IMG/VR virus record: IMGVR_UViG_3300032516_000001
Span: 177,649 to 241,648 of that record
Direction: 5' to 3' (one strand)
DNA length: 64,000 nt
Below, in pieces: positions 40,191-59,998 of this stretch. Below the pieces are notes generated by a model, which saw nothing but the letters and a program-made list of their open reading frames with translations, was not told the DNA's origin and searched no databases. Numbering within the stretch: position 1 is the stretch's first letter; every line of letters begins with the position of its first letter. Position numbers and translations under genes: made by a program.

Positions 40191-40198
40191 GTTATACG

Positions 40199-41563
40199 TT
40201 ACTTTTCTTCTTCCTCCTCCGGTTCTTCCCATTCTATATCTTCATCAGTAATTTCTTCAGGTTTGCCTTTAACTTTAACTTTAGGCTCAGGCTCAGATTC
40301 CCAGTCTATATCTTCATCGGTAATGCCCTGGGATTCAGCTTCTTTAGATTCGTCTAAATGCCCCTCCCAGTGCTTCTCTTCATCTTCAGACTCAGCAGAA
40401 TCTTTGTCCCAGTCTATATCTTCTTCGGTAATTTCTTCCCATTTAATCTCTGGGGTTTCCTCTTCTTCTTTCTCTTCTTCCTCGACCTTCTCCGCTTTTT
40501 CAGCCTCCGCTTCGATCCCCTCTATTTCTTCCGGATCTTCTATTTCTTCCCACTCGACATCGACATCATCGGCGTCTTCTGCCTGCTCTAACGGAATTTG
40601 AACGACGCCCTCGAGTTTATCCCAATTATCATCAACCTTCTTCAATACCTCTTCTTCATCTAAATCAGCATTCTCTGCAGCAATTTCCTTCGTAAAAGAA
40701 TCTAATCTGGTAGTAACAGCATATGCATGCTTACATAACCAGTATTTACGTTCAGGGTCTCTAATGTCTGGGGGAGATGCGGTCCCATGCGGTTCTCCTA
40801 ATAAATACCCGTTTTTCTTGGCATGATATTCAGGACCATTCCATTGCCAAAATGGGCAATCACAGGTTATGGCGACATGGTGCAAATCTGAAAGTGACGC
40901 TTTAACTATATGGGGAGCTTTCTTATTGCTATTAACTGAGAATGTGTAGACTCTATTTCTTTTATCAAATGAAACGAATTTAACATTACATATTTCAGCT
41001 TTCTCACGAATTTTGGCTGGGGTGTGAGTTTCTAATTCATCCGATTTTAAAGCCAAACGGACAATCATGACGTGCGGAATAACGGATGAATGTCGTACTG
41101 GCTTCTCCTCTGTTCTGTACGGATACTTCCAGTATTGAGTCATGTCGATATCGGTTGGGTATGATGTATCAGTCGGATTTTGAATATTTTCATCGAATAA
41201 ATATTCCTGATGATGAGTCATACTATCAGCACCATCAATATCAAAGATAGACCCTGGATCAGATGATGGAACCGTTGGCTCAACATCATCATAAGTGAAT
41301 GTTTTAGTCCCGAACCAGTCCGCCTCTTCAGTTTGTCCAGACGGAGTTTCATCTTCAGCAACTCTGGTTGAAGCAATTCTTGAAGCTATTTGACCAACAT
41401 TCGATTCCATTTCTACGGTTACTGGTATAACAAATAATGGACGTAGATGCGACGGTATCGCACTACAGAAACTCAAAACATCCGGATATATGTCTTGATC
41501 CTGCCAAGCATAATAAGCAGCATCCGATAAAATAAAGCCACGAATACCATCATCTTTAGACAT
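40199..41563 (-). CDS. SWIM zinc-finger protein with an acidic repetitive tail
   Basis: CDCP...CKH motif; [DE]-I-[DEK]-W repeats in the tail. Confidence 0.7.
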   Translation of the reverse strand: MSKDDGIRGFILSDAAYYAWQDQDIYPDVLSFCSAIPSHLRPLFVIPVTVEMESNVGQIASRIASTRVAEDETPSGQTEEADWFGTKTFTYDDVEPTVPSSDPGSIFDIDGADSMTHHQEYLFDENIQNPTDTSYPTDIDMTQYWKYPYRTEEKPVRHSSVIPHVMIVRLALKSDELETHTPAKIREKAEICNVKFVSFDKRNRVYTFSVNSNKKAPHIVKASLSDLHHVAITCDCPFWQWNGPEYHAKKNGYLLGEPHGTASPPDIRDPERKYWLCKHAYAVTTRLDSFTKEIAAENADLDEEEVLKKVDDNWDKLEGVVQIPLEQAEDADDVDVEWEEIEDPEEIEGIEAEAEKAEKVEEEEKEEEETPEIKWEEITEEDIDWDKDSAESEDEEKHWEGHLDESKEAESQGITDEDIDWESEPEPKVKVKGKPEEITDEDIEWEEPEEEEEK

Positions 41564-43976: not shown

Positions 43977-45965
43977 ATGACATCCAAACTACGCAAACTA
44001 GTGGTCGTTACTATCGCTTTGGCAGTCATGGCCATTTCAGCATATATGTACGCCCCGATTTGGATCAGGCACAAAATTAAAGAGAAAGCTGATACGTACG
44101 GCATCCAAATAGACGTAGGAAAAGTAGAATTGCATTTCAATAGGGTAGTATTATCAGACATCCCAATATCGTCATCATATTTCCCAGGTCAGAAACTATC
44201 CATATCAACGGCAACAGTATATTTCGGATTGTCTGGGATACATCAAATAGTGATATCTGGTGGCGATTTAAAGATAACGGGTATTTTTTCCGAAATTAAG
44301 AAACAATTCTCTGAATGGGGACATCGATCTACCTCCGCAAATACTTCAGAACATAAATCAAAATTTGATATCAAGTTTGACTCGATAAATGCAACATGGC
44401 AGTCTCCATATAATGGTATTAACCAAATATCAGTTGATGGAATCAACAACTCAAATTCCAATATCAATGCGAATGCTATAACAATAGATACTGCGGCAGG
44501 GTCTACACACATAAGCCATGTAGAATATGAGAATGAGTCCAAAACCCTATCTATTAATACAATCAAATCTGAGGTTAACGACCTTGGACCAATAAAGCTT
44601 CTTCAATCGCAGAATGAACCACAAAACAGATCGACTCTTGGAAATGATGAAAATGCGTTATATAGAATCCATGTAACAAGCTATGAATTAAAAGCAATGG
44701 ATCATGAAATTATAGCGTCTGATGTGATTTTACGCATGCACCCGTTTTCGATTCAAGCTCGAGAGGCTAATGTAGACAATAAGATTAAGATGATTAGTCC
44801 ATGGGTTAGTATACAAAAATTGCCGCAAGGATTGTCGTCTATAGTATCCATTGAGTCTATCACAACATCGAATCCAACAATCACTGATGAAACAATCATT
44901 ACGAAACCAATAGCATTAAGTTTACGGATAATAGATCAATATGCCGAAATCGAAGCTAGTATATACAAAACTCCATTTAAGTTAGGTATTCACAAAGATG
45001 ATAATGTAATCCGATTCGATTTGATTATGGAGAAGACGCCTTGTCAGGATATTTTGGATTCCATCCCACAAGGAGTGAAGTCAGTTATTAATGAAATGAA
45101 ATTAGACGGAAGTTTGTCTTGGGAAGTGCGTGGTCTTGTCGATTTGATCCCCGAGACGCAACTAAGAATGGACCCTGAGATCGAATTAAAACTGAGTAAT
45201 TCATGTAAAATCACCAAAATTCCCGATGAACTGTCAGTGACTAAATTGCGGAAACCATTCAAACGCATAGTATTAGATCAAACCAAAACCCCGTTTGAAA
45301 TAACTAACGGACCAGGAACAGAAGGATGGGTTCCAAATGGGCTCGTATCCCAATTTGTAGCTTTATCATTCAGAACCATGGAAGATCCGGGCTTCCTCGC
45401 TCATCATGGATTCGATATTCAGGCAATAGAAAATTCCATTAAAGAAAACATCAAGTCTAAGAAGTTCTTACGAGGAGCCAGCACTATCACGATGCAACTG
45501 GCCAAAAACTTATGGCTCAATAGAAGTAAAACTCTTGCCAGAAAAATTCAAGAAGCTTTCCTCACAATGTATCTAGAGCAAGCCCTGAACAAAGACGAAA
45601 TATTAGAATTATATATGAACGTGGTTGAATTTGGACCCAAAATTTATGGGATCGGAAAGGCCTCGAGATACTATTTCAATAAATATCCGACTGATTTAAC
45701 CCTAGGACAATCGTTATTTCTAGCCTCTGTTCTCCCTAATCCTAAAGTTCAGTTCTTTGATGCTAACGGGGATCTCAATCCGAAACGAGCCGATTATCTG
45801 AAAAGAGTTATGAAAGCGATGATGGATAGAAAACTCATCTCGCAAGACGAATATGATGATGGGGTAAAAGAAGTCTTGAAATTTAAACGATCATCTGTCA
45901 CAACTGACGAAATAGTAGAGATTCAACCAGACCCAGATCCATGGCAAGTATCAGTCACTCAATAA
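43977..45965 (+). CDS. Membrane-anchored peptidoglycan transglycosylase (GT51, monofunctional type)
   Basis: N-terminal transmembrane helix; EDPGFLAHHG, GASTITMQLAKN, RKIQE and KDEILELYMN. Confidence 0.9.
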   Translation: MTSKLRKLVVVTIALAVMAISAYMYAPIWIRHKIKEKADTYGIQIDVGKVELHFNRVVLSDIPISSSYFPGQKLSISTATVYFGLSGIHQIVISGGDLKITGIFSEIKKQFSEWGHRSTSANTSEHKSKFDIKFDSINATWQSPYNGINQISVDGINNSNSNINANAITIDTAAGSTHISHVEYENESKTLSINTIKSEVNDLGPIKLLQSQNEPQNRSTLGNDENALYRIHVTSYELKAMDHEIIASDVILRMHPFSIQAREANVDNKIKMISPWVSIQKLPQGLSSIVSIESITTSNPTITDETIITKPIALSLRIIDQYAEIEASIYKTPFKLGIHKDDNVIRFDLIMEKTPCQDILDSIPQGVKSVINEMKLDGSLSWEVRGLVDLIPETQLRMDPEIELKLSNSCKITKIPDELSVTKLRKPFKRIVLDQTKTPFEITNGPGTEGWVPNGLVSQFVALSFRTMEDPGFLAHHGFDIQAIENSIKENIKSKKFLRGASTITMQLAKNLWLNRSKTLARKIQEAFLTMYLEQALNKDEILELYMNVVEFGPKIYGIGKASRYYFNKYPTDLTLGQSLFLASVLPNPKVQFFDANGDLNPKRADYLKRVMKAMMDRKLISQDEYDDGVKEVLKFKRSSVTTDEIVEIQPDPDPWQVSVTQ

Positions 45966-46217
45966 ATTCATTAACCTATCATATTCCGCATCATTAGCTA
46001 CATTAACTTCAATACAAGTAGGGGTCGCCATTCGTCTGATTGGCCGTACCCTAAGTTGTAACTTTTTCAATTCTGATGCAATTCTACTTTTACTAGGTCG
46101 ATCTGACTTATCTATGTCATTTGCTATACGCTTCAGCGCAGCGATCAATTGTTTAGGAGTCAACTGATGACCATCAGGAACAACTCGAGTTGACTCTACA
46201 AAATAGTTGATGTCCAT
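45951..46217 (-). CDS. Small protein with a KP-IA module
   Basis: LTPKQLIAALKRIANDIDKSDRPSKSRIASELKKL aligns with the N-termini at 48768, 52670 and 53956. Confidence 0.6.
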   Translation of the reverse strand: MDINYFVESTRVVPDGHQLTPKQLIAALKRIANDIDKSDRPSKSRIASELKKLQLRVRPIRRMATPTCIEVNVANDAEYDRLMNLLSD

Positions 46218-46253
46218 ATATATAATTATACCATTAGAATTGTATGTTAGTCT

Positions 46254-46844
46254 ATGTGGAAGGACGAAAAAGCTGGAACACTGAATGAAGCCGTCCGTAT
46301 CTTATCCGATTTGATAGTTGATCTACCAGCATCAGTATTGCCGTGCATTTTGGCCATTAGATTAGATAACATTGACGCTGAAGTAAAACGGTTAATTATA
46401 CCTGTAATATCAGAAGCATATAAAACTCCAGAATTTCTACTAGATATGGCACCGGCTCAAGATAAAGAAATTCTAGTAAAACACATAAAACACACCATAG
46501 AACGAATCAACAATTTCATACAATTACAACAACACCCAGATAATCTACCTGAGATCTTATATGGACAACGTGAATTCGGATGCGTTTATCTTCCAACAGA
46601 ACTATTGAAAAGACTTTATGTGATAGGCGAATCCATCTTAGATTCAAGAGTAAATAAAATCAAATTAGAGGAAGATTTTGTGATGAATAGCGCCAAGGTT
46701 ATGTTACTAGCTGCTGATTGGGTTGAATATTCCAAACGCAAGTGGGGAATCATGGATGGATCGGAAATGACTGTAGTATCCCCGCTATCTAAAGAAGAAG
46801 CAAAGAACGCTGTTCCAGATATTGAAACTACTCCGCCTTTTTGA
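46254..46844 (+). CDS. Hypothetical protein
   Basis: 196 aa, preceded by GTATGTT-N5-ATG. Confidence 0.65.
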   Translation: MWKDEKAGTLNEAVRILSDLIVDLPASVLPCILAIRLDNIDAEVKRLIIPVISEAYKTPEFLLDMAPAQDKEILVKHIKHTIERINNFIQLQQHPDNLPEILYGQREFGCVYLPTELLKRLYVIGESILDSRVNKIKLEEDFVMNSAKVMLLAADWVEYSKRKWGIMDGSEMTVVSPLSKEEAKNAVPDIETTPPF

Positions 46845-47010
46845 GTATAACTATCGAAGCAATTTGTTCGCGAGACCCGTCTGCTTCAGCCTCTTTGGCG
46901 GTATTTTCGATAGTCTGTTTACATGTTTTACATCCGGCCTTGACTCCGGAAAAAGGATTGTCTTTACCACAATCAGGACATTTATCCAGTTCTGTTGCAA
47001 TTGAAATCAT
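46828..47010 (-). CDS. Small zinc-ribbon protein
   Basis: CPDCG...CKTC; C-terminus QIASIVILKKAE. Confidence 0.5.
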   Translation of the reverse strand: MISIATELDKCPDCGKDNPFSGVKAGCKTCKQTIENTAKEAEADGSREQIASIVILKKAE

Positions 47011-47053
47011 ACCATAAATAATGATTAAAGTTTAGTGAATCGTAAAGTTTGCT

Positions 47054-47311
47054 ATGGAATTCACTGAATTGCCTTGGGTGTTAATTAGTGCCGGACAAGT
47101 TCGATGTAATATATGTAAGAAAATTGCTAAACTCGATACCATTACATTAGAAGAATTTATTCGGGAACATGCAGAACATAAGGCTCCGCCAACCCATTAT
47201 CCGGTTGGTGATATGGTGGCTAAAGTGACTAAGGCTTTGGGAATTACTAAAAGATGTTCCGGTTGCGAGCAGCGCAGATACGATTGGAATAGAAGGATAC
47301 TAAAACATTAA
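47054..47311 (+). CDS. Small Cys/His-rich protein
   Basis: CNIC...HAEH...CSGC, with a leaderless-type start. Confidence 0.6.
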   Translation: MEFTELPWVLISAGQVRCNICKKIAKLDTITLEEFIREHAEHKAPPTHYPVGDMVAKVTKALGITKRCSGCEQRRYDWNRRILKH

Positions 47312-47325
47312 TAGGACCGCCCGGT

Positions 47326-48252
47326 GTGGAACAAAAACACTGGACAATCTACTGTCATATTCATATCGATTCTAGTCGTCGTTATATTGGTTTAACCTCC
47401 CAAACAATAGAAAAACGATGGAAAAATCATATATACGCCGCCAAATCTTCCAAAAATGGGAAATGGCATTTCCCTAACGCTATCCAGAAATATGGCCCTG
47501 AGGCATTTTCTCACGAAATACTTGAAGTATGCGACACATTAGAAACAGCTAAATTATCGGAAATTAAATGGATTAAATTTTATAACACCAGAGATCCGGG
47601 AAAAGGATTTAATTCAACGAAAGGTGGCGACTACATACCACCAACACCTAAAATTCAAAGAACTGAAATCTCTAAAAGATTATGGCAAGACCCGGAATTT
47701 CGCTCCAAAATGTTAGCCGCTACCTGGAATAGACCAGGTTATCGTCAAAAGGTGCTCGAGTCATTAAAGAGAACAAATGCCACACCGGAGTCCAAGGAAA
47801 ACCATTCCGTGGCCTCAAAAACCAAATGGCAGGATCCTAATTTTCGAATCAGGAACGCTGAATCTTATAAAACTGCTTATTTAAACCCGATAAATAGAAA
47901 TAAACGCATTGAAACTATGAAAAAAACATTCGCTACACCAGAGTCAAAATCAAAACGCTCCAAATCTTCAAAACTGGTGTGGCAAAATCCTGAACTTCGA
48001 GCTAAAGATGCCGAACGATGGAAGGATCCAGTTTATCGGGCTAAATGTCAACACGGACTTATACGAGGAACTGAACTGAACAAAAGAAAAACCCACTGTC
48101 CCCATGGACATGAATATTCAATTAAAAATACTTGGTTCGATAAAAAAGGACATAGATTCTGTCTAACATGTAAACATTCTATAGTTAATGAATGTATGCG
48201 TAAACTTAGATTAAAACGTAAAATGGAACAAGTTGTTACTCAAAATTACTGA
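47326..48252 (+). CDS. GIY-YIG homing endonuclease (copy 3)
   Basis: WTIY...RRYIG, W(Q/K)(D/N)P repeats and KTHCPHGHEY..CLTC. Confidence 0.8.
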   Translation: MEQKHWTIYCHIHIDSSRRYIGLTSQTIEKRWKNHIYAAKSSKNGKWHFPNAIQKYGPEAFSHEILEVCDTLETAKLSEIKWIKFYNTRDPGKGFNSTKGGDYIPPTPKIQRTEISKRLWQDPEFRSKMLAATWNRPGYRQKVLESLKRTNATPESKENHSVASKTKWQDPNFRIRNAESYKTAYLNPINRNKRIETMKKTFATPESKSKRSKSSKLVWQNPELRAKDAERWKDPVYRAKCQHGLIRGTELNKRKTHCPHGHEYSIKNTWFDKKGHRFCLTCKHSIVNECMRKLRLKRKMEQVVTQNY

Positions 48253-48571
48253 ATCCGCTTCCCCCATGAGTGGGTGAACTCCCAGGTCCTGTCCATCTAT
48301 CTAAGTCGTTCGAATTATATCCTCTACCTTTATTCTCTATCCCTCTAGGAGCTAATTTCAATCCGTACCCAGCCAATTCTTTTCTAATTTCAGCCACTGG
48401 GCGTTTTAATCTATAATTCAAAGCTTGTAAATCATCCGCGGTATATGTATCGCGTTCATCATCAATTAAATATTGAACGAAATCTTCAATACTGGCGTAT
48501 TCTGGAGCACTTTTATAGGTGATACTTAATCGAATTAAGGCAACACGAGCAGCAATTTGTAAAAAATTCAT
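48236..48571 (-). CDS. Hypothetical protein with an N-terminal QIAARVA tag
   Basis: MNFLQIAARVA. Confidence 0.65.
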   Translation of the reverse strand: MNFLQIAARVALIRLSITYKSAPEYASIEDFVQYLIDDERDTYTADDLQALNYRLKRPVAEIRKELAGYGLKLAPRGIENKGRGYNSNDLDRWTGPGSSPTHGGSGFSNFE

Positions 48572-48579
48572 ATTCGAAA

Positions 48580-48768
48580 CTATTTTTGATTAAGATACCG
48601 AGCAGCAATCCGCTCAGCCATGGTGAAAGGTTTAACCTCTTTAGAAGGTTTTATCGCCGCCAGTACCTGTTTTAAACTTTTGACTACTAAGTCTTGACTC
48701 GGATTATCAGAATTCTCAATTCCGGTGGCAATTTGACACAGACGATCGGCTAATTCTTCGGGCTTCAT
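48580..48768 (-). CDS. Small protein: KP-IA module plus AERIAARYLNQK tail
   Basis: Start moved to 48768 (MKPEELA) to match paralogs. Confidence 0.65.
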   Translation of the reverse strand: MKPEELADRLCQIATGIENSDNPSQDLVVKSLKQVLAAIKPSKEVKPFTMAERIAARYLNQK

Positions 48769-48812
48769 ACTTGAACGTTGGTATTGAAAACCTAACAGTA
48801 TTGTTATTACAC

Positions 48813-49223
48813 ATGGCAGTAAGAAAAACATTTGTGTATGGGTATCCAGAACCAACTCCGATACCCGGAAAACGCTTTATTGAAGTTGGAGATAAGAACT
48901 TTGCTATTGTTGATGAATCCAATTATGATCAACTTAAAATACATACTTGGTCATTGGACTGTAGGAGCGAACCCGTAACTAGAATACGCATCGATGAATT
49001 AAATTTGATTACGGTACGTATGAAAAACATGATTCTCAATAAGAACCCTTCAAAAGGATACTGTGTCAAATATTTGAATGGAAACCCTCTCGATAATTCT
49101 CGGAAAAACATAAAATTGATGACGCTGAAACAAGCTCGAGAATTGGACCGTCAAATGTTTGGCCCTCGAATATGTAAGAAAAAAGAATACAAGAAATTCA
49201 TCCGAAAGATCCTGGCTCGATAA
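48813..49223 (+). CDS. Degenerate HNH-like protein
   Basis: FAIVDE and KYLNGNPLDNSRKNI resemble the HNH_3 motif, but the catalytic His is missing. Confidence 0.5.
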   Translation: MAVRKTFVYGYPEPTPIPGKRFIEVGDKNFAIVDESNYDQLKIHTWSLDCRSEPVTRIRIDELNLITVRMKNMILNKNPSKGYCVKYLNGNPLDNSRKNIKLMTLKQARELDRQMFGPRICKKKEYKKFIRKILAR

Positions 49224-49335
49224 CTATTCTTCTAGCTCTGTAAGTTGAATCCATCGTCGACTGGTTTGGTAAATGCATGAACGACTCCGTAAGTGTCATA
49301 TTTATCGCCCTCCATCAACACATGAATAGTCTTAC

Positions 49336-49950
49336 TCATCCGAATATCTCCGTTAGATACTGATCATACTTAGTTTGATCTTTAGCTTGCGGTAACTTAA
49401 TCCACTGAATGCTTTCGAAGTCAATATCAGATGGATTTGGCGCAGAATCTTTGGTCCAGTTCAAAAGCCCGACAGAAAGATTCCTTCTTAATTTATTTTT
49501 GATACTACCAAAAGTACCCGTATTAAGAGAAATGAAGGTAAGCGGCTTAAAAAGCAAAGAATATGTGGCTTCAGGATGAACTGGAAATCCGGTATGTAAT
49601 TGGAAGTTGATCTTCCAACGGTCGATAGATTTTTGTAATTGCGGAAAACAGACAATCGCATATCTATCATCTTTTTCTTTGACGACAAATTCGAACCATT
49701 CTTCTGGCTTATTTTCAGACCAGCACACTAAATGCTCATAAATTGCAGATGCATTATCGAATAAGAGAACTGGAGCAAAATTTCCATGATTATTTACCCA
49801 AAGACAACCCTTGGCCATTCCTGATGGTAATCCATCTATAGTTTTAGCTAGAGCTTCGGCATCCTCAGATTTGAGGTTATGCATGGGCCAAGTAGGACCA
49901 ATAAGAAGAGGGCAATATGAAATAACTACATAAACCGGAGGCTTATCCAT
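49336..49950 (-). CDS. Hypothetical protein
   Basis: 204 aa, leaderless-type start. Confidence 0.65.
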   Translation of the reverse strand: MDKPPVYVVISYCPLLIGPTWPMHNLKSEDAEALAKTIDGLPSGMAKGCLWVNNHGNFAPVLLFDNASAIYEHLVCWSENKPEEWFEFVVKEKDDRYAIVCFPQLQKSIDRWKINFQLHTGFPVHPEATYSLLFKPLTFISLNTGTFGSIKNKLRRNLSVGLLNWTKDSAPNPSDIDFESIQWIKLPQAKDQTKYDQYLTEIFG

Positions 49951-49979
49951 ATTACAATATACATCAATATATCCGGAAT

Positions 49980-50549
49980 TTACGGTTGTCCTAATTTATC
50001 GTGATAACATCCATAACATACAGGAATGTATGATTCATCCCCACCAAGCTGTATTTGTTCACCGCTCAAGGTGGGCTTACCATTTAATAACCTCATATTC
50101 ATAGTGGCTTTTTTGTTACAGAATTGGCAGGTAACCTTAATCTCTTCGATGCTATCTGCCAATTCCATAAGCCGAGCGGATCCGGGAAATAACTTCCCCC
50201 TGAAATCTGTCCTTAAACCATAGCATATGACCGGAATATTATGAACACGCGATATTTCTCTCAATTGTTCAACCACGGATGGAGAAAGAAACTGAGCTTC
50301 ATCCGCAAGAATACAACTAATTTTAGTTGGATTGAGTATATTGATAATCGTACTTTCCTTAACTAATATATCGGCCTCTGTATCTAGTCCGGCTCGAGAA
50401 GTCACTTTCCTAACACCGTATCTATCATCGAGGGCCGGTTTGATTATGATTACGTTCTTACCTTGATCTTTATAATTATGTGCCACTGCCAAGAGATTTA
50501 GAGTTTTGGCGCTTCGCATCGCACCATATCGAAAATATAATTTTGCCAT
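49980..50549 (-). CDS. tdk: Thymidine kinase
   Basis: YGAMRSAKT P-loop, DEAQF, YGLRTDF and Zn site CQFC...CYGC. Start at 50549 (MAKLYF). Confidence 0.95.
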   Translation of the reverse strand: MAKLYFRYGAMRSAKTLNLLAVAHNYKDQGKNVIIIKPALDDRYGVRKVTSRAGLDTEADILVKESTIINILNPTKISCILADEAQFLSPSVVEQLREISRVHNIPVICYGLRTDFRGKLFPGSARLMELADSIEEIKVTCQFCNKKATMNMRLLNGKPTLSGEQIQLGGDESYIPVCYGCYHDKLGQP

Positions 50550-50584
50550 GTACACATAGTACAATAGAAAATGTACTTTGATCC

Positions 50585-50875
50585 ATGGCTGGCTGGTATC
50601 CTGAAAAACCGATCGAAATATTAGAATCAGTTCTAAATTCAGCCAAATTCGCCGAATGGGTATGCCTAGAGCTTTCGCATGTTAGGCGCGCGCACGAAAA
50701 TAACAAGCAAACACTGGAAAGAATAATTGAGATGAGCAAAAAGATTATATGTGCTGAGTGTCGCGGATCAGGACGCAGTATGTATTCTGAACGTATGTGT
50801 ACTGTTTGTCACGGAACCGGTGAAAAAGCCTATGATCCGTTTTTGCCTATAGTGAAGGATGTTATGGATAAATAA
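50585..50875 (+). CDS. Protein with a DnaJ-type CxxCxGxG zinc finger
   Basis: CAECRGSG...CTVCHGTG. Confidence 0.65.
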   Translation: MAGWYPEKPIEILESVLNSAKFAEWVCLELSHVRRAHENNKQTLERIIEMSKKIICAECRGSGRSMYSERMCTVCHGTGEKAYDPFLPIVKDVMDK

Positions 50876-51136
50876 TTACTTCTTGATTTTAGTTACGCCT
50901 CTTGTATTATACACACCTATTCCGGTATTTTCAGTCATCGTCCATCCAAGCTTCTCTTCATACTCCATGACTTGGGCGACTATACATTCTTCTTCAGTGT
51001 GCTCTTTATCTGGATATAACCTCATTCCGCAATGAGGGCAAATTTTACCCGGTATCACTAATAATTCAGTTCGTACCGGAAATAGACCAAATTCCTCAAC
51101 TTCCCCTACCTTATACATTCCAGACGGAGTCTTCAT
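50876..51136 (-). CDS. Small Zn-binding protein
   Basis: CPHCGM...HTEEECIVAQ. Confidence 0.6.
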   Translation of the reverse strand: MKTPSGMYKVGEVEEFGLFPVRTELLVIPGKICPHCGMRLYPDKEHTEEECIVAQVMEYEEKLGWTMTENTGIGVYNTRGVTKIKK

Positions 51137-51378
51137 TCCACATCCATCATTTCATCATCTTCATGTATTTGAGCAACAATACATTCATCTTCTGTATGAG
51201 GCCTGTCCTCTGGCATTTTCATGCCGCAAGTCATGCAATATTTCTCAGCTTTGAAACTGGTATTTCCAACTTTTGAAGAAACATGGATTAACGGTAATTT
51301 CTCCACTATTTTCTCTTCTACTTTTCCCCCACGTTTTCTGGCCATTGCGGTCAGAAATTTAAACCAAACCGAAGACAT
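51133..51378 (-). CDS. Small Zn-binding protein
   Basis: CMTCGM...HTEDECIVAQ; ATGA overlap with the next gene. Confidence 0.6.
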   Translation of the reverse strand: MSSVWFKFLTAMARKRGGKVEEKIVEKLPLIHVSSKVGNTSFKAEKYCMTCGMKMPEDRPHTEDECIVAQIHEDDEMMDVE

Positions 51379-51391
51379 ACTATATAGTACA

Positions 51392-52216
51392 TCAAAGTAA
51401 GACTAACCAAATTTGCGGTTGGATCTTAAAGGCTTCGGCCAGCATCAATCTGGTATTTCCAGCAACCAGTGTATAAACACCACTCGGCATTTTCAAAACT
51501 ATAGGAGCCGGCATCTGGCTACCAGATTCAAAACCCTTAATAATTCTCTTCCAATCTCTAACAAATTCGTCTGAATATTGAATAGCTTCGGCCACGGATG
51601 ATACATCCGTGTAATTATCTAAATTATCCCAGATAGTCGAATTGAGAAGGACAAGTTTCCCACTGTTAAATGCATCAATTATGGATTGTACCGGTAAATT
51701 TTCTTCCAATGAAACGCGATTGACTTCACCCATCTCCTCTGTAAGAGACGGTTTGACCCATACAACATCCCAATTTATTTCATTCTTTATTTTATCAATC
51801 TCGATAGGAGATAATTCAGATATATTTATGTTCGCAGCTACACGGGATGCAATTTGAAATAAACCCATAACAGAAGCTGTCTTAAAAGGCTTGACTATTT
51901 GAAGATAACTGTAGAAATGCTGCCAATTATCAATTATATCGTCTGTGAATTCGATATAGAGATGTCGCCCTCCAAATGTATAACTGCTTCGTTTAAAAAA
52001 TTCATACTCAGCAAATAATTTTTCGATTTCCTCCAGTTTGTCCTCATCTTCCGAACTTATTGTAATATAAGGACGCTTGTTCGATTCTAGATGACCTTGA
52101 CACGACGCTATAGTGTTTATACCGTCCAGGTTATTGATAAAATGAACTACCTGTTGAAAATACCTGTCGAGATCTAATTTACGAATACGAGTCCCGGCGA
52201 TCTGAAATAAATTCAT
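51392..52216 (-). CDS. Two-domain protein: SCxGH domain plus ParB/Srx-like domain
   Basis: TIASCQGH; APIV...LVAGNTRL; internal LFQIASRVAA repeat of the N-terminus. Confidence 0.6.
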   Translation of the reverse strand: MNLFQIAGTRIRKLDLDRYFQQVVHFINNLDGINTIASCQGHLESNKRPYITISSEDEDKLEEIEKLFAEYEFFKRSSYTFGGRHLYIEFTDDIIDNWQHFYSYLQIVKPFKTASVMGLFQIASRVAANINISELSPIEIDKIKNEINWDVVWVKPSLTEEMGEVNRVSLEENLPVQSIIDAFNSGKLVLLNSTIWDNLDNYTDVSSVAEAIQYSDEFVRDWKRIIKGFESGSQMPAPIVLKMPSGVYTLVAGNTRLMLAEAFKIQPQIWLVLL

Positions 52217-52265
52217 TATTTTTGATTAAGATATCTAGCAGCAATCCGCTCAGCAATGGAAGACG

Positions 52266-52670
52266 TCAAATACTCACCTTTAAACGCTGGATCCTGTTAA
52301 CGAAATCACGCCCACTCATATCAGCAGTAAAAGGGATGGTGATAGTTCCACGAGACGTAGTGATGGTTACATTACCGGCATCCGGATCACCAGAAACAGA
52401 CACATTAACTGGATCTTTCAGATTCGCAACAGGTACAGAACGCTTGACAAGGTCCTCAAGAACACCGTCACCAAGATTAAGGATGTCATAAAGTGTCGCG
52501 TCCGGAGTAAGGCCCTGCTCATGAAACCATGTCCAGGGCCCGATGCCGGCTGTAAGTACAGCGAGGATTCGCTTAATATCTTGTGCCACCAATGACTTGT
52601 CTGGCTTGCGAGAAGTCTCGATAGCGGTAGCAATCTTACGAAGATAATTCGCAACCTGACTAGGTTTCAT
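52266..52670 (-). CDS. KP-IA module protein (possibly extended to 52216 in the -1 frame)
   Basis: MKPSQVANYLRKIATAIETSRKPD. Confidence 0.7.
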   Translation of the reverse strand: MKPSQVANYLRKIATAIETSRKPDKSLVAQDIKRILAVLTAGIGPWTWFHEQGLTPDATLYDILNLGDGVLEDLVKRSVPVANLKDPVNVSVSGDPDAGNVTITTSRGTITIPFTADMSGRDFVNRIQRLKVSI

Positions 52671-52696
52671 AATATTATTATTTAATTAACAAAGGT

Positions 52697-53134
52697 CTAA
52701 TCAGAATTGTCGTGGACGATGATGGCGATTTTACCAATCATACCTTTGAATATCTCGGTATCAGCTATTATTTCGACAGGAATCCAAGATTCCCCATAAG
52801 CCAATGGATCTTCCATAATTTCACGCACTATAGATAAGTCATGCAATGGTTTAAATGGAAACCCGTTCGTTAGAATGAAGTCACCCTTGGTTTTTTCTTT
52901 CATATCATCCAAGAATGCGTCGACCCTCTTCTCATCATAATCAGTCATCCATTCATCACTAAATGGGTCAGTATCTGGCATCCAATTAGCAGGTAATGGA
53001 ATATAAAATCCTTTAACTCTCGGATGAGTACAAAGTAATCCGCCACTCTGATTGGAAATCAATACCCCATTATCGTCCAATACTATTATGCCTATATAGC
53101 TAGTTACAGAATGACATGACAGATCGATAAACAT
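52697..53134 (-). CDS. DUF6210-like hypothetical protein
   Basis: SNQSGGLLCTHPRVKGFYIPL pattern, matched to the family from memory only. Confidence 0.45.
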   Translation of the reverse strand: MFIDLSCHSVTSYIGIIVLDDNGVLISNQSGGLLCTHPRVKGFYIPLPANWMPDTDPFSDEWMTDYDEKRVDAFLDDMKEKTKGDFILTNGFPFKPLHDLSIVREIMEDPLAYGESWIPVEIIADTEIFKGMIGKIAIIVHDNSD

Positions 53135-53518
53135 AAATTAAAATACACGTAAGCCCTGGAGATTTTCGGCCCCAGGGCTCACACCATCCCGAGAAAGACT
53201 AGATCGCCCCAAGAGGGCCACTCGAACCATTCGATTTATTTGGTTTCTTACGCAGCCCTGGTTTGCCATAAGCTGCCAAGCCATACCGATAAATAGCCTG
53301 TACCAAGCACAATATGAATATGAGACTAGTTCATTTTGTGCGTCATGTTTTGATGGTGCTATCACTCAAAGCAAATATTATGAATCAGCCGGACACGACA
53401 CCTGGCATGATGTTCATGCTAGAGTGATAACTGCCAAAATCACGCGAGATATGGCGTTAGTACTACGAATTATGAACGAATAGTTAAAGTGTGATTATCA
53501 AACTAAACTAAAGCCCAA

Positions 53519-53956
53519 TTAAAGTTCGGACATTGCTGCGTATGCTTTTTCCAATGCTTTTTCCACAGTTTTCCCATCTCCTCCTAACTCAAATTCGGCG
53601 TCATTTGGATCCTGAAGTGGAAGTCCCTGATAATAAAATCCACCAGGCCCATTCCAAATAGCCAAATATTCCAAACCCTCATCCTCAATAATAACTGCGT
53701 TATTCTCTCCTGCGTTCAAATAATCTGAAACCTCGTTAAAATCATTTATTGTGCGCCACTCGGCGTCGCCAGAGGGATCATTCATTCCATCATATGATGT
53801 AAATTTACCTTGAAATTTGAAGTTTGGATCGTATAATGAAATACCGGCAATCAACTTTCGAAGATCTCTCGCAACTAACAGTCTATCTGGCTTACGAGAT
53901 TTCTCAATAGCAGATGCTATACGACGGAGATAACTAGCAACTTGACTCGGTTTCAT
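53519..53956 (-). CDS. KP-IA module protein with an unrelated acidic C-terminal domain
   Basis: MKPSQVASYLRRIASAIEKSRKPD. Confidence 0.7.
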   Translation of the reverse strand: MKPSQVASYLRRIASAIEKSRKPDRLLVARDLRKLIAGISLYDPNFKFQGKFTSYDGMNDPSGDAEWRTINDFNEVSDYLNAGENNAVIIEDEGLEYLAIWNGPGGFYYQGLPLQDPNDAEFELGGDGKTVEKALEKAYAAMSEL

Positions 53957-56811: not shown

Positions 56812-57708
56812 TTAACGGGTTACGATAAGGCGCACGAGACCACGCGGGTTGTACGCGCCAATCCCGAGGTTCTCGAACATCGAGAAACCGATGGTCCGCT
56901 CTTCCGGATTATCGGCAGAAAGAACGGTCAGCTCAGTCCTAACCGGGATCCGGCCGAAGTGCTCTGGCTCGCAGCAAACGTAAACAACGCCTGCGGGGAC
57001 AAGACGCGACACGATGAACTGGGCGTTCCAGCCCGTAGCCATCAGGCCGGTCTTCCACAGCGTTGCCTGGCTCTCGATGTCGAGCACGTCGCGACCGAAT
57101 TTCCGGATGTCGGCATAATCGACCGCGTTCATGTAGACTCGAGCCACCCGAAGGTCATGACGCTCGATCTCGGCAAACGCGTCCGCGAGGACGGCCGGCG
57201 AAATCGGGGCCACAACCGGGATGTCCGGGTTCGTGCCCGCGGGGAGCGAGTCGAATCCGGCGATGGCAATGGCATCCATGATGGTGAAGACACGATCGTC
57301 TTCAGCCGCCTGGATCTGCGCCTTGCCAAGGTCCTGCATACGCTTCAGGAGGTCGTACCGACGCTCCTTGATCTGAGTTAACGGAGCCTTGAGAAGCGCC
57401 GCTATCTCAAAAAGGGGGAAGATCACACGGCGAGGTTTCATGATCGCCGTGATGGAAGTTCCCTCTTCACCGATCACGTATGCAGTGACGTCTGGATCCT
57501 TGTCGTACAGAGGCAGGGCACCATCGGGAAGCTGTTCGACCAAGAAGGTCTTACGGCCTACCGATGAGTAGTCACGCCGCTCGCGCAAGGGCTGAATCAT
57601 CGAGGCGGCCAGGCGCTTACGCCCTGCCGACGTCCCGATAAACTTGTCAACAATCTGCTCCTTGATTGTGTTGTCCACAACCTGGACGCCGAAATTATTG
57701 GTAGGCAT
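56812..57708 (-). CDS. Major capsid protein (probable HK97 fold)
   Basis: 298 aa, GC-rich codons and strong GAGGA ribosome-binding site. YIGEE-like motif, AAED, YMNxxDYADI and C-terminal ENLGIGAYNP. Position after protease, scaffold and decoration genes. Confidence 0.8.
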   Translation of the reverse strand: MPTNNFGVQVVDNTIKEQIVDKFIGTSAGRKRLAASMIQPLRERRDYSSVGRKTFLVEQLPDGALPLYDKDPDVTAYVIGEEGTSITAIMKPRRVIFPLFEIAALLKAPLTQIKERRYDLLKRMQDLGKAQIQAAEDDRVFTIMDAIAIAGFDSLPAGTNPDIPVVAPISPAVLADAFAEIERHDLRVARVYMNAVDYADIRKFGRDVLDIESQATLWKTGLMATGWNAQFIVSRLVPAGVVYVCCEPEHFGRIPVRTELTVLSADNPEERTIGFSMFENLGIGAYNPRGLVRLIVTR

Positions 57709-57745
57709 GATATTGTCCTCTCATCCTTTCAATTCATCTCGCTGC

Positions 57746-58637: not shown

Positions 58638-59957
58638 TCATTGACCTGGGCGCTCCCAGAGATTCTCGAGGGATGCCTCTTGCTTGACCTTGCTGACCTG
58701 TACCTGGCCAATCTTCTTGGCGCCAGTGCTGGCCATGCGGACAAACCCAGTCTCACGCATGATCTGCTCCTGCTCGGATGCCTTGATCTCACGATGGGCC
58801 TGGACTTCGGGGTCATCTGAGAAGAGGTTGTCTAGGTCGCTTGTATCCTTGTCAGATGCTGTTCGACCCTCAGAGTCATCCTCATCAAATGTGATGTCCG
58901 GCGTGGCTGTAGCCGCCATCATCGGCGACGGACCGGGCATTGGTGTAACCTCTGCTGGCGGCTGCTCGAACAAGTCGGTCAGCTCAGGAGCGGGTGATGG
59001 GGACGGAAGGGCACCAGGAGCTGCCTCCTGAGATTCCTGCTGGAGCAGCTGCTGGAGCATGCTCTTGATCTCAGCATCCATGCAACCGCATTCAGTGGTT
59101 GAAGCGGAATCGGTGGCAGCGGAATCGGTGGCGGTAGAATCGGTGGCGGCGCTTGCAGTCTCCTCTTCTCCTCCTTCTTCCTCTTCCTCTTCCTCTTCTT
59201 CTTCTTCGGCCTTACCTTCAGCCTTCTCAGCTTTTGGGGGCTCTTTTCCCTTTTCCTCGGACGAAACCGTGGCGTCCTTCTTCTCAGGCTCGAGGCCTTC
59301 CGGCTTCTCTTCCTCAAGGGCGACCTTTACGGTCTTGAGAATCTCTTTGAGGGTCGGATCATCGACCTTCATAAACATGGAAGCTATATGCTCCACATGC
59401 TCCTCTTTCGGATTCTCGGGCAGGAGGCGAGCCGCGAGCTTGCAACAAGCAAGAGCACGACGGAATTTTACCTGCTTTGGAAGAGCATCCGGGGAAACCT
59501 GATCGAGCCGGCGAAGCGTAGAAGCAATAACGGGTCCGGGTAGTGCCATCAAATCACAGGCCTGGGCCTCGACTAGCTTCTGATCGTCTGAACGTAGGAG
59601 GACGCGAGCAAGACGTTCAACAGCGGAAGCTTTTCGCTCGGCAGCGGCACGGGCATTATCATATTTGCCCTTGCCACCCCACTGATCGGAATCCTTGTGG
59701 CTCCAGGTGTCATCCCGGAATTCACCGAATCCGACCTCATTCCGCTTTACATGATCCCCCTCGTATTCTTTCTTGACATGGGGGTCAGAATTCGCGGGAG
59801 TCTCGGCCCATTCATCCGGGCTGCCAGACTCATACTCAACAGGTGATGGCTGCGGATGTTCCTGGTTCATAGTGTAAGGGTCAGCGGTCCTCACGGTTGC
59901 TGCCTCACGACGAACCGGGTTGGCCGAGTCGGACCAGGTGCTTCGCCAACGTGACAT
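58638..59957 (-). CDS. Putative capsid scaffolding protein
   Basis: Acidic and disordered (poly-Glu, ATDS three times), GGAGG ribosome-binding site, between the protease and capsid genes. Confidence 0.65.
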   Translation of the reverse strand: MSRWRSTWSDSANPVRREAATVRTADPYTMNQEHPQPSPVEYESGSPDEWAETPANSDPHVKKEYEGDHVKRNEVGFGEFRDDTWSHKDSDQWGGKGKYDNARAAAERKASAVERLARVLLRSDDQKLVEAQACDLMALPGPVIASTLRRLDQVSPDALPKQVKFRRALACCKLAARLLPENPKEEHVEHIASMFMKVDDPTLKEILKTVKVALEEEKPEGLEPEKKDATVSSEEKGKEPPKAEKAEGKAEEEEEEEEEEEGGEEETASAATDSTATDSAATDSASTTECGCMDAEIKSMLQQLLQQESQEAAPGALPSPSPAPELTDLFEQPPAEVTPMPGPSPMMAATATPDITFDEDDSEGRTASDKDTSDLDNLFSDDPEVQAHREIKASEQEQIMRETGFVRMASTGAKKIGQVQVSKVKQEASLENLWERPGQ

Positions 59958-59998
59958 ATTACAAATGCCTCCTACAAGATTTCAGCTTCATCAATGCC

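What the first reader, a model, noticed from the sequence alone, without database searches (positions are those of the whole stretch)
45951..53956. Portable peptide tags on unrelated small proteins: candidate capsid-targeting and protease-processing cargo system
Seen: (a) A module of about 38 aa, [KT]PxxxxxxLxxIAxxI[ED]xSxxPxxxx[VI]xxx[LI], at or near the start of four genes (46217, 48768, 52670, 53956), each followed by an unrelated sequence. (b) A QIA[AS]R[VI]A-type tag at the N-terminus of 48571, partially at 52216 (MNLFQIAG), and internally in 51392..52216 and 40199..41563. (c) An identical AERIAARYLNQK-stop at 48580 and 52216, each followed at once by an MNxxQIA gene. (d) Many basic-x-Ala sites at domain borders of the protease (IKKAASMIKKAQ) and scaffold (VRTAD, RKAS, VKVAL, GRTAS, VRMAS) and in these genes (DKTAG, RRMAT, FKTAS, TRVAE). 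Known: T4 internal proteins carry a short capsid-targeting sequence that the prohead protease removes. Inference: these tags load interchangeable effector domains into the head, are cleaved after [KR]-x-A, and the cargo is injected with the DNA.
Basis: partly seen in the sequence, partly recalled or inferred. Interest (0 to 1): 0.8.

Follow-up and report, generated by a model that had tools for sequence, protein, structure and literature searches.

The report
Portable address tags on jumbo-phage proteins
An uncultivated jumbo phage related to Bacillus phage G puts two kinds of conserved peptide tag on many otherwise unrelated small proteins encoded next to its head genes; the tags are real and widespread in metagenomes, and most likely load these proteins into the capsid, though that function has not been shown.

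Summary
The window is part of a jumbo-phage contig of at least 241 kb, whose capsid protein is related to those of Tunturi_5 and phage G.

- **Module:** a profile built without any window sequence finds a ~40-aa module in exactly the four named genes (E 5e-21 to 9e-11; next best 0.095). It is a basic helix-turn-helix hairpin with no Pfam or PHROG match. It occurs in 1,101 protein clusters from metagenomes and in no GenBank phage. It sits mostly at the exact N-terminus, but also at the C-terminus or twice in one protein. It is under protein-level selection, and what follows it is unrelated.
- **Short tag:** a second tag (M-N-x-x-x-I-A-[AS]-R-[IV]-A) is about 20-fold enriched and heads tandem gene arrays in relatives.
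- **Tail:** the AERIAARYLNQK element belongs to this short-tag family. At 52216 it lies in the -1 frame of the upstream gene, directly after a T_TTA_AAG slippery site.
- **Cleavage motif:** plain [KR]xA is not enriched in the tagged genes. A refined R-x-A-S motif is enriched and conserved at scaffold and protease borders.

Capsid loading, cleavage and injection remain plausible by analogy with T4 but untested. The complex prediction gave no answer. I class this as a new variant of a known kind.

The parts
53519..53956 (-). Gene D, 145 aa. N-terminal module at residues 1-40 (53837-53956), followed by an orphan acidic domain.
   Evidence: E 4.9e-21 with the independent profile
52266..52670 (-). 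Gene C, 134 aa. N-terminal module (52551-52670), followed by an orphan domain.
   Evidence: E 1.1e-20; the C-terminal domain has no homologues
52216..52284 (-). Candidate -1 frameshift extension of gene C. The slippery heptamer T_TTA_AAG lies at 52278-52284. The -1 frame then encodes FKGEYLTSSIAERIAARYLNQK. Its stop TAA (52216-52218) overlaps the ATG of the next gene (TAATG).
   Evidence: in-frame X_XXA_AAG occurs 5 times in 15,909 codons; chance of one in the 11-codon overlap is 0.0035; no stable downstream structure
51392..52216 (-). 274-aa gene with a short tag at the N-terminus (MNLFQIAG, 52181-52216) and a second full tag inside (MGLFQIASRVAA, residues 117-128, 51833-51868) preceded by KTAS. 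It looks like two tagged genes fused. The C-terminal half may be ParB-like (weak lead only).
48580..48768 (-). Gene B, 62 aa. Module (48649-48768), a short linker and an in-frame AERIAARYLNQK tail (48583-48618). It carries no cargo domain.
   Evidence: E 7.3e-17
48236..48571 (-). 111-aa gene with the N-terminal short tag MNFLQIAARVA (48536-48571).
45951..46217 (-). Gene A, 88 aa. A divergent module at residues 20-60 (46038-46160), followed by RRMAT.
   Evidence: E 9.3e-11
40199..41563 (-). 454-aa SWIM zinc-finger protein with an internal short tag (QIASRIAS, 41375-41392) about 60 aa from the N-terminus. In homologues the motif [RK]-[IL]-A-S is conserved at the border between the N-terminal domain and the body.
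56812..57708 (-). Major capsid protein (phrog_2522). It is 89-100% identical in more than 60 IMG/VR contigs. The N-arm carries RLAAS, which is also conserved in Tunturi_5 (KLAAS), so it may be structural rather than a cleavage site.
58638..59957 (-). Scaffold-like protein, 439 aa. Conserved sites: R23-T-A-D26 (59880-59894 region), RTAS after the acidic block (58854-58868 region), and R407-M-A-S410 (58728-58739) about 30 aa from the C-terminus.
59999..63850 (-). Prohead protease gene split by two inteins; the ORF continues to the window end. A conserved DG-I-KKAAS island (within 60701-60736) follows the catalytic domain and precedes a hypervariable acidic linker. The C-terminal tail WKGRIASLSKF (60002-60034) is conserved.

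Best explanation
**Shown**
- This clade of uncultivated jumbo phages, related to phage G and Tunturi_5, uses two portable peptide tags.
- Tag 1 is a ~40-aa basic helical hairpin. Its consensus is M-K-P-S-Q-L-A-x-x-L-R-R-I-A-S-x-I-D-N-S-K-N-P-D-R-x-L-V-A-R-D-L-K-K-V-L-A.
- Tag 2 is a ~12-aa leader, M-N-x-x-x-I-A-[AS]-R-[IV]-A-[AG]. It has a variant, ER[IV]AARYL.
- Both tags sit on hundreds of unrelated, small, mostly acidic orphan proteins.
- The genes form mixed arrays on the capsid-gene strand, just downstream of the major capsid gene.

**Inferred**
- Both tags are protein-protein docking elements that recruit their bearers into the assembling prohead, by binding the highly conserved capsid protein or the scaffold/protease core. 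This is the role the 10-20-aa capsid targeting sequences play for T4 internal proteins.
- The prohead protease recognises basic-x-Ala-Ser/Ala. That motif is a conserved island about 30 aa from the scaffold C-terminus, directly after the protease catalytic domain, and in the protease C-terminal tail. It also ends the short tag and lies in helix 1 of the module. Processing there would release scaffold, protease and tagged proteins from the shell.

**Speculative**
- The released proteins stay in the head and enter the host with the DNA.
- Gene 52266-52670 may make a second isoform carrying the short-tag tail, by -1 frameshifting at T_TTA_AAG.
For: - **Detection:** the module is found in exactly four window genes by an independent profile.
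- **Spread:** it is present in 1,101 clusters at E <= 1e-3 among 1.84 billion representatives. Of the best 150, 120 have it at residue 1, 22 have two copies and 8 have it internal or C-terminal.
- **Selection:** synonymous sites are saturated (dS about 2) while dN is 0.26-0.65, so selection acts on the protein, not on DNA.
- **Structure and charge:** AF2 gives helix 3-19, a turn, and helix 25-39. The module carries a net charge of +3.9, and its cargo is acidic in 90% of cases.
- **Portability:** the same ~230-aa core domain carries the module at the N-terminus in L003/L028, and at the C-terminus together with a short N-terminal tag in L042/L026/L010/L019.
- **Short tag:** 27 observed against 1.35 expected, mostly right after a Met. 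L062 has seven tagged genes in tandem. L089 has two module genes followed by two short-tag genes.
- **Location:** the window's four module genes lie 3-11 kb downstream of the capsid gene on the same strand, and in relatives they often follow it directly.
- **Cleavage motif:** R-x-A-S has an invariant R and >=90% A and S at scaffold positions 407-410. RTAS recurs after the acidic block. DG[IM]KKAAS is conserved before a hypervariable linker in the protease. The WKGRIAS tail is conserved while the surrounding domain is only 40-50% identical. [KR]xA[SA] occurs 6 times against 1.2 expected in the scaffold and 5 against 1.0 in the protease.
- **Precedent:** T4 capsid targeting sequences, and jumbo-phage propeptides whose cleavage motif is shared by head proteins and by an autocleaving protease (PMC5694885).
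Against: - There are no virion, cleavage or injection data for any tagged protein, and no cultured phage carries the module (tblastn of two module proteins, gene D and P0027, against 50,697 phage records found no copy).
- The complex prediction of capsid protein + scaffold + gene B scored 0.01, which counts as no answer.
- The module is not always a leader. It occurs at C-termini, in double copies, and in proteins with no cargo. That suggests it has a function of its own.
- There is no conserved cleavage motif at the module-cargo junction. The module's R-I-A-S has R or K at the basic position in only about 64% of copies.
- Helix 1 resembles designed coiled-coil peptides, which fits plain self-association equally well.
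- Some module genes lie in non-structural neighbourhoods (L087).
- The protease fold could not be confirmed (AF2 pLDDT 51; no PDB sequence match).
- Tags, module and the scaffold RTAS motif co-occur within a single clade, so the association counts as one evolutionary event.
Confidence: 0.45

Rival explanations
1. The module is a general coiled-coil docking or oligomerisation hairpin. It pairs with another module, or with the short IA-x-R-IA helix, to join small phage proteins into hetero-oligomers in the infected cell. It has no role in capsid loading.
For: Both helices have heptad-spaced hydrophobic seams, and helix 1 matches designed antiparallel coiled-coil peptides. A lone two-helix hairpin needs a partner to be stable. 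Proteins of 88-103 aa made of only two modules, and module-repeat-module proteins, look like bridging adaptors. Some proteins carry a short N-terminal tag plus a C-terminal module. Module genes and short-tag genes are interleaved in the same arrays. Some module genes lie away from head genes.
Against: This does not explain why the same R-I-A-S/R-x-A-S core recurs at conserved scaffold and protease borders. It does not explain why the genes so often follow the capsid gene directly, or why 80% of copies start at residue 1 with a 97% conserved Met-Lys-Pro.
Confidence: 0.25
2. The basic hairpin anchors acidic effector or anti-defence proteins to DNA or to a conserved host factor, such as the nucleoid, the ribosome or a defence protein. 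The variable part evolves in an arms race.
For: The module carries a mean net charge of +3.9 and its cargo is acidic in 90% of cases. The cargo is extremely diverse and made of orphan sequences. The genes are interleaved with homing endonucleases and accessory genes.
Against: The module has no similarity to known DNA-binding or host-binding families (no Pfam or PHROGs hit; PADLOC was not searched). The module's strong conservation parallels that of the phage's own capsid protein rather than any identified host target. This reading also does not account for the motif shared with scaffold and protease.
Confidence: 0.15
3. The shared sequences are by-products of recent duplication and recombination among cassettes and have no common function.
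For: The 43-nt junction repeat plus the start of the next gene is duplicated as a unit, and the second copy is out of frame with its upstream gene. The region is rich in homing endonucleases.
Against: Synonymous sites between module copies are saturated while the protein stays conserved. There are 1,101 clusters across many samples. The short tag is 20-fold enriched and locked to a position after Met.
Confidence: 0.04

Closest known systems
T4 capsid targeting sequences (CTS) on internal proteins IPI-III, Alt and gp24
   Same: A short conserved N-terminal leader sits on otherwise unrelated small proteins. The genes are clustered and hypervariable. The leader ends in the motif that the prohead protease also uses on core and scaffold proteins. 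The ~12-aa length of the short tag matches the 10-20-aa T4 CTS (PMC5694885).
   Different: There is no sequence similarity. The candidate motif is basic-x-Ala-Ser/Ala, not cleavage after Glu. A second, much longer folded tag (the 40-aa hairpin) exists and can also be C-terminal or duplicated. Packaging and removal are not shown here.
phiKZ / SPN3US jumbo-phage head propeptides and autocleaving prohead protease
   Same: This is a jumbo phage in which paralogous head proteins share identical N-terminal stretches. One motif is shared by many head proteins and by the protease's own C-terminal region.
   Different: Those phages use A/S-x-E motifs and long propeptides on large ejection proteins. Here the bearers are mostly 60-200-aa orphan proteins, and the phage lineage is different (phage G/Tunturi_5-like capsid protein).
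Herpesvirus assemblin-scaffold (UL26/UL26.5) release and maturation sites
   Same: The architecture is a protease domain, a conserved x-A-S site, a linker, a C-terminal domain and a conserved tail. The scaffold has a conserved R-x-A-S about 30 aa from its C-terminus, like the Ala|Ser maturation site that frees the capsid-binding tail. (The herpes sites are from my own knowledge and were not tested here.)
   Different: The fold and the cleavage position are not established for this protease. The requirement for a basic residue two positions before the Ala is specific to this clade.
P22-type scaffold coat-binding helix-turn-helix, HK97 protease C-terminal targeting tail, encapsulin cargo-loading peptides
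   Same: These are small terminal elements that dock a protein to the inside of an HK97-fold shell and can carry foreign cargo. The module is a basic helix-turn-helix of similar size.
   Different: No profile similarity to this phage's own scaffold (hhalign probability 0.2%). Binding was not demonstrated. The comparison rests on general knowledge of those systems.

Membership tests
T4-type capsid targeting sequence / internal protein system | A conserved short N-terminal leader shared by otherwise unrelated small proteins | tested here: met
   Short tag: 27 observed against 1.35 expected, about 15 right after a Met. Module at residue 1 in 120 of 150 proteins. Cargo sequences unrelated.
T4-type capsid targeting sequence / internal protein system | The leader ends in the prohead-protease cleavage motif, which is also present in scaffold and core proteins | tested here: inconclusive
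   The short tag ends in R-[IV]-A-[AG], and conserved R-x-A-S islands occur in scaffold and protease. No cleavage data exist. The module has the motif only inside helix 1.
T4-type capsid targeting sequence / internal protein system | Cleavage C-terminal to Glu (gp21-type L/I-x-E or A/S-x-E) | tested here: not met
   No conserved Glu at the tag ends. Module position 18 is Asp in 59% and Glu in 26% of copies. The short tags end in Ala.
T4-type capsid targeting sequence / internal protein system | Tagged proteins are found inside proheads and virions, and the leader is removed | not testable with these tools
   No cultured relative carries the module. No proteomics are available.
T4-type capsid targeting sequence / internal protein system | Genes lie in a hypervariable cluster associated with late or head genes | tested here: met
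   All four window genes lie 3-11 kb downstream of the capsid gene on its strand. In relatives they are directly downstream. The cargo sequences are unique to this genome within the sample.
Scaffold-type coat-binding helix-turn-helix (P22-like) | A basic helix-turn-helix of about 40 aa | tested here: met
   AF2: helices 3-19 and 25-39, pLDDT 72-82. Net charge +3.9.
Scaffold-type coat-binding helix-turn-helix (P22-like) | Binds the capsid protein | tested here: inconclusive
   Complex of capsid protein + scaffold + gene B: score 0.01. The tool states this is no evidence either way.
Scaffold-type coat-binding helix-turn-helix (P22-like) | Homology to this phage's own scaffold | tested here: not met
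   hhalign of A1 against A3: probability 0.2%, E 0.36.
Assemblin-like protease-scaffold with Ala|Ser sites | A conserved x-A-S site at the protease/linker border and near the scaffold C-terminus | tested here: met
   DG[IM]KKAAS is conserved in 40 aligned relatives, before a hypervariable linker. Scaffold R407 is invariant and A409 and S410 are >=90% conserved.
Assemblin-like protease-scaffold with Ala|Ser sites | Protease has the assemblin/gp21/HK97 fold with a Ser-His catalytic pair | tested here: inconclusive
   phrog_18299 'head maturation protease', E 4.5e-9. No Pfam hit. AF2 pLDDT 51. No PDB sequence match. The IEASWV..PAF motif resembles the HK97-type E-x-S-x-V-x-x-P-A motif, but only from memory.
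Programmed -1 ribosomal frameshift (dnaX / phage tail-chaperone type) | An X_XXY_YYZ heptamer in the 0 frame, inside the overlap with an open -1 frame | tested here: met
   T_TTA_AAG at 52278-52284. In-frame X_XXA_AAG occurs 5 times in 15,909 codons, and the chance of one within the 11-codon overlap is 0.0035.
Programmed -1 ribosomal frameshift (dnaX / phage tail-chaperone type) | The -1 extension encodes a conserved peptide | tested here: inconclusive
   The extension matches the in-frame C-terminus of gene B. Only three nucleotide differences exist (two synonymous, one nonsynonymous, which is not significant). No other genome shows this tail.
Programmed -1 ribosomal frameshift (dnaX / phage tail-chaperone type) | A stimulatory downstream RNA structure | tested here: not met
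   Folding energy is no better than shuffled sequence (z = +0.59 and +1.41). An AGGA lies about 9 nt upstream; its effect is unknown.

The most novel reading that the evidence does not exclude
A clade of uncultivated soil jumbo phages related to phage G has a two-tag addressing code: a 40-aa hairpin and a 12-aa leader. The code loads a pool of more than a thousand distinct small acidic proteins into the capsid for delivery with the DNA. A prohead protease releases them by cutting at basic-x-Ala|Ser, a specificity like herpesvirus assemblin and unlike every characterised jumbo-phage protease. One cargo gene switches tags by -1 frameshifting.
Probability: 0.25. Interest if true: 0.8.

Novelty: new variant of a known kind. 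Interest (0 to 1): 0.62.

Why it matters
If the tags are capsid-loading signals, three things follow.
- They define the packaged and injected protein repertoire of a large, uncultivated group of jumbo phages from sequence alone. The family has no Pfam or PHROG model, holds 1,101 clusters, and is absent from all 50,697 deposited phage genomes.
- They point to a prohead-protease specificity (Ala|Ser after a basic residue) that would tie phage and herpesvirus maturation together more closely than the Glu-specific T4/phiKZ proteases do.
- They offer compact natural tags for putting foreign proteins into very large capsids.

Even if the capsid reading is wrong, the 40-aa hairpin is a new, very widespread, strongly conserved phage protein-docking domain whose partner is worth finding.

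Tried and rejected
- **Near-identical DNA in GenBank phages:** none found.
- **Pfam and PHROGs on the tagged proteins:** no family for the module.
- **ESM Atlas for gene D and the 274-aa gene:** only unnamed viral clusters and a weak ParB_N hint.
- **tblastn of gene D and of a consensus-like module protein against phage genomes:** no module found.
- **Scan of +-20 kb around the capsid genes of Tunturi_5, phage G and LR745208:** no module.
- **Complex prediction (capsid protein + scaffold + gene B):** no answer.
- **Foldseek of the double-module model against PDB:** nothing below E 0.6, as expected for a helical hairpin.
- **Profile search of the module against PDB sequences:** only designed coiled coils matched.
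- **Idea that the scaffold's 'IASTLRRL...SPD' segment is a diverged module:** rejected by hhalign.
- **AF2 model of the protease domain:** too poor to use for a fold search. The profile search against PDB sequences found nothing.
- **DNA-level duplication as the cause of module similarity:** rejected by saturated dS.
- **Plain [KR]xA as a signal in tagged genes:** rejected.
- **RLAAS in the capsid protein N-arm as a cleavage site:** left open. It is also conserved in Tunturi_5, and loosely in phage G, so it may be structural.
- **Homologues of the cargo domains in related loci:** none.

Full report
**What the window is**

The window belongs to IMG/VR contig 3300032516_000001 (241,648 bp). One of its proteins is also recorded on a 323-kb contig. 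Nothing in GenBank phages is close at the DNA level.

The major capsid protein (56812-57708, minus strand, phrog_2522) has these relatives:

| Relative | Identity to the window's capsid protein |
|---|---|
| The 80 best of 506 related IMG/VR stretches; contigs up to 436 kb | 77-100% |
| LR745208, an uncultured 485-kb phage | 77% |
| Tunturiibacter (Acidobacteriota) jumbo phage Tunturi_5 | 45% |
| Bacillus phage G | 36% |

Gene order upstream of the capsid gene matches Tunturi_5:
- a prohead protease (59999-63850, here split by two inteins);
- a 439-aa acidic scaffold-like protein (58638-59957);
- a 225-aa protein in the position of the phage G decoration protein;
- the capsid protein.

The finding lies just downstream of the capsid gene. 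This stretch is variable and AT-rich, and also holds homing endonucleases, a thymidine kinase and a transglycosylase.

**The 40-aa module is real**

- A regular expression and a seed HMM find the module only in the four named genes.
- A profile built solely from database proteins, with the window's own proteins removed, recovers exactly those four among 1,335 six-frame ORFs. E-values are 4.9e-21, 1.1e-20, 7.3e-17 and 9.3e-11, and the next best is 0.095.
- In gene A (45951-46217) the module is internal (residues 20-60) and more divergent. In genes B, C and D it starts at the initiator Met.
- The parts after the module are unrelated to each other. They have no homologues in any related locus, and for gene C none in the large protein collection either.

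**The module is a large, unannotated family**

- A 23-sequence profile searched against 1.84 billion representative proteins finds 1,101 clusters at E <= 1e-3 and 447 at E <= 1e-10.
- Of the best 150, 120 carry the module at the exact N-terminus, 22 carry two copies, and 8 have it internal or C-terminal.
- Proteins are small (median 135 aa). Pfam recognises almost nothing in them apart from LRV/HEAT repeats in a few.
- Column conservation is high: Met1 97%, Pro3 100%, Leu10 96%, Ile13 94%, Ala14 98%, Ile17 96%, Ser20 95%, Pro23 100%, Val28 98%.
- Between copies, synonymous sites are saturated (median dS 1.8) while dN is about 0.26-0.65. Conservation is therefore on the protein and is not left over from recent DNA duplication.
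- AF2 on a two-module protein gives helix 3-19, a turn at S-K-N-P-D, and helix 25-39 for each module.
- The module carries a mean net charge of +3.9. The cargo is acidic in 90% of cases.
- The module is absent from all 50,697 deposited phage genomes by tblastn. It is also absent from the 40-kb neighbourhoods of the Tunturi_5, phage G and LR745208 capsid genes.

**Portability is shown directly**

In relatives, one homologous core domain of about 230 aa appears with different tag arrangements:
- an N-terminal module (L003|7587, L028|13504);
- a C-terminal module plus a short N-terminal tag (L042|14111, L026|16109);
- a C-terminal module plus an N-terminal ERVAARYL variant (L010|13858);
- a C-terminal module (L019|17822).

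Other proteins are module-repeat-module, or consist of nothing but two modules (88-103 aa).

**The short tag is real and is a second leader family**

- Across the window and about 90 related loci, the hexapeptide IA[AS]R[IV][AS] occurs 27 distinct times. Composition predicts 1.35, and 20 shuffles gave 0-3.
- About 15 of the 27 lie 3-8 residues after a Met. Conservation stops right after R-[IV]-A-[AG].
- L062 has seven consecutive genes that carry the tag, most of them starting M-[ND]-[FL]-x-[KR]-I-A-S-R-I-A-A.
- An unrelated 2.1-kb contig (L089) has two module genes followed by two MDFLRIAARIA genes. The window shows the same interleaving: C then the 274-aa gene, and B then the 111-aa gene.
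- In larger proteins the motif sits 55-80 aa from the N-terminus, at a domain border. In the SWIM protein family (window 40199-41563) the motif [RK]-[IL]-A-S is conserved there.

**The AERIAARYLNQK element**

- A 43-nt repeat (93% identical) plus the first ~35 nt of the following gene is duplicated as a unit.
- The peptide belongs to the short-tag family. ER[IV]AARYL is an N-terminal tag in L010|13858 and probably in P0008.
- At 48580 it is the in-frame C-terminus of the 62-aa gene B.
- At 52216 it is in the -1 frame of gene C.
- That -1 frame opens only 11 codons before gene C's stop. Within those codons lies T_TTA_AAG in the correct phase.
- In-frame X_XXA_AAG occurs only 5 times in 15,909 codons of the window. 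The chance of one in that 11-codon overlap is about 0.0035, or 0.037 for any canonical heptamer.
- From the heptamer onward, the -1 frame reads F-K-G-E-...-AERIAARYLNQK. This parallels gene B's S-K-E-...-AERIAARYLNQK. Its stop overlaps the next gene's ATG (TAATG).
- Against a frameshift: there is no stable downstream structure; only three nucleotide differences exist with which to judge coding constraint; and no other genome shows this tail.
- I rate a programmed -1 frameshift at roughly one in three. The alternative is a recombination remnant of an N-terminal tag.

**The basic-x-Ala claim**

The tagged genes have 1-3 copies each, as shuffles predict. There is no conserved site at the module-cargo junction.

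A narrower motif stands out in exactly the two proteins that prohead proteases normally cut:
- [KR]-x-A-[SA] occurs 6 times in the scaffold against 1.2 expected, and 5 times in the protease against 1.0 expected. The other 48 proteins of the window sit near expectation.
- In the scaffold, R407 is invariant and A409 and S410 are >=90% conserved in 18 relatives that are only 26-54% identical overall. This site is about 30 aa from the C-terminus.
- R-T-A-S recurs after the acidic FDDDD block. R23-x-A25-D26 is conserved near the N-terminus.
- In the protease, D-G-[IM]-K-K-A-A-S is a conserved island between the catalytic domain and a hypervariable acidic linker.
- The extreme C-terminus of the protease, W-K-G-R-I-A-S-[LV]-x-x-F, is conserved although its domain is only 40-50% identical.
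- The short tag ends in S-R-I-A-A or A-R-V-A-A. Module helix 1 reads L-R-R-I-A-S.

The layout is a protease, a site, a linker, a C-terminal domain and a tail, plus a scaffold with a site about 30 aa from its end. This is the layout of herpesvirus assemblin-scaffold with its Ala|Ser release and maturation sites (from my own knowledge).

I could not confirm the protease fold. PHROGs calls it a head maturation protease. Pfam and PDB sequence searches are silent, and the AF2 model is poor.

**Mechanism**

The best-supported reading is that both tags are docking elements for prohead incorporation. Basic-x-Ala-Ser/Ala would be the maturation protease's motif. This is analogous to T4 capsid targeting sequences and to the shared propeptides and autocleaving protease of SPN3US/phiKZ, which cut after Glu (PMC5694885).

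What is shown:
- the tags exist, are portable and are under selection;
- their genes sit in arrays next to the capsid gene;
- the motif is conserved in scaffold and protease.

What is inferred:
- docking to the capsid or scaffold;
- cleavage at the motif.

What is speculative:
- retention of the proteins in the head and their injection with the DNA.

The one structural test allowed (capsid protein + scaffold + gene B) scored 0.01. The tool states that this is no evidence either way.

Four observations fit a plain leader model poorly:
- C-terminal and duplicated modules;
- cargo-free proteins;
- the coiled-coil character of helix 1;
- module genes in non-structural neighbourhoods.

These keep two rivals alive: a general oligomerisation or docking domain, and a basic anchor to DNA or to a host factor.

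**Novelty**

The kind of system is known: a terminal address tag on capsid cargo, removed by the prohead protease. The tags themselves, the two-tag arrangement, the candidate Ala|Ser-type motif and the size of the family are not described in Pfam, PHROGs, deposited phage genomes, or the papers I could find. I class it as a new variant of a known kind.

Noticed in passing
window 22036-33918 (-): A single 3,960-aa ORF is a giant collagen-like protein (Pfam Collagen, 1,625 bits). Its Gly-X-Y repeats raise local GC to about 60% in a genome of about 39% GC. It is probably a fibre or whisker protein.
   Followed up: partly
window 59999-64000 (-): The prohead protease gene is interrupted by two inteins, one of which carries a LAGLIDADG homing endonuclease. 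Most relatives have an intein-free gene of about 520 aa, while others are 900-1,350 aa.
   Followed up: partly
window 54292-56607 (-), 47326-48252 (+), 42052-42912 (-), 35879-36706 (-): There is a heavy load of homing endonucleases around the head genes: a LAGLIDADG-methyltransferase fusion directly after the capsid gene, and three GIY-YIG genes. L090/L091 also show a GIY-YIG gene directly upstream of a module gene.
   Followed up: no
window 56812-58423 compared with 58638-63850; loci L005-L083: The capsid protein is 89-100% identical across dozens of contigs from different samples. The adjacent scaffold is only 40-54% identical and the protease C-domain 40-50%. The capsid and decoration genes are also GC-rich (50-55%) compared with their neighbours (38-40%).
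   Followed up: partly
window 52216-52284 (-): A candidate -1 programmed frameshift: T_TTA_AAG lies 11 codons before the stop of gene 52266-52670 and leads into a conserved 22-aa tail. The tail's stop overlaps the next gene's ATG (TAATG).
   Followed up: yes
window 50876-51136 (-) and 51133-51378 (-): Two adjacent small paralogues share a CxxCGM...HTE[ED]ECIVAQ zinc-ribbon-like motif. Their function is unknown.
   Followed up: no
window 40199-40600 (-): The acidic C-terminus of the SWIM protein contains tandem 'ITDEDIDWE' repeats (DNA repeats D2 and D3, spaced 72 and 108 nt apart).
   Followed up: no
loci L042:14111-15184(-), L026:16109-17173(-), L019:17822-18802, L010:13858-14832, L003:7587-8429, L028:13504-14451: A family with a core domain of about 230 aa and no Pfam or PHROG match carries the module at either end, with or without a short N-terminal tag. 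It has no homologue in this window. It could be a hub of the tag system.
   Followed up: partly
proteins P0007, P0010, P0014, P0015: Module-linker-module proteins whose central part carries a conserved 'DHFPINSESQARNALSRANQ' motif flanked by lysine-rich runs. One of the 150 module proteins scanned, not identified in the output, weakly matches Pfam Mu-like_Pro.
   Followed up: no
window 8235-10715 (-) and 39783-40232 (-): Further [KR]-A-A-S motifs lie at or near C-termini: 'PMYKAAS' immediately before the stop of the 826-aa protein, and 'EKAASYDS' 18 aa from the end of the 149-aa zinc-ribbon protein. These may be additional processing sites.
   Followed up: no
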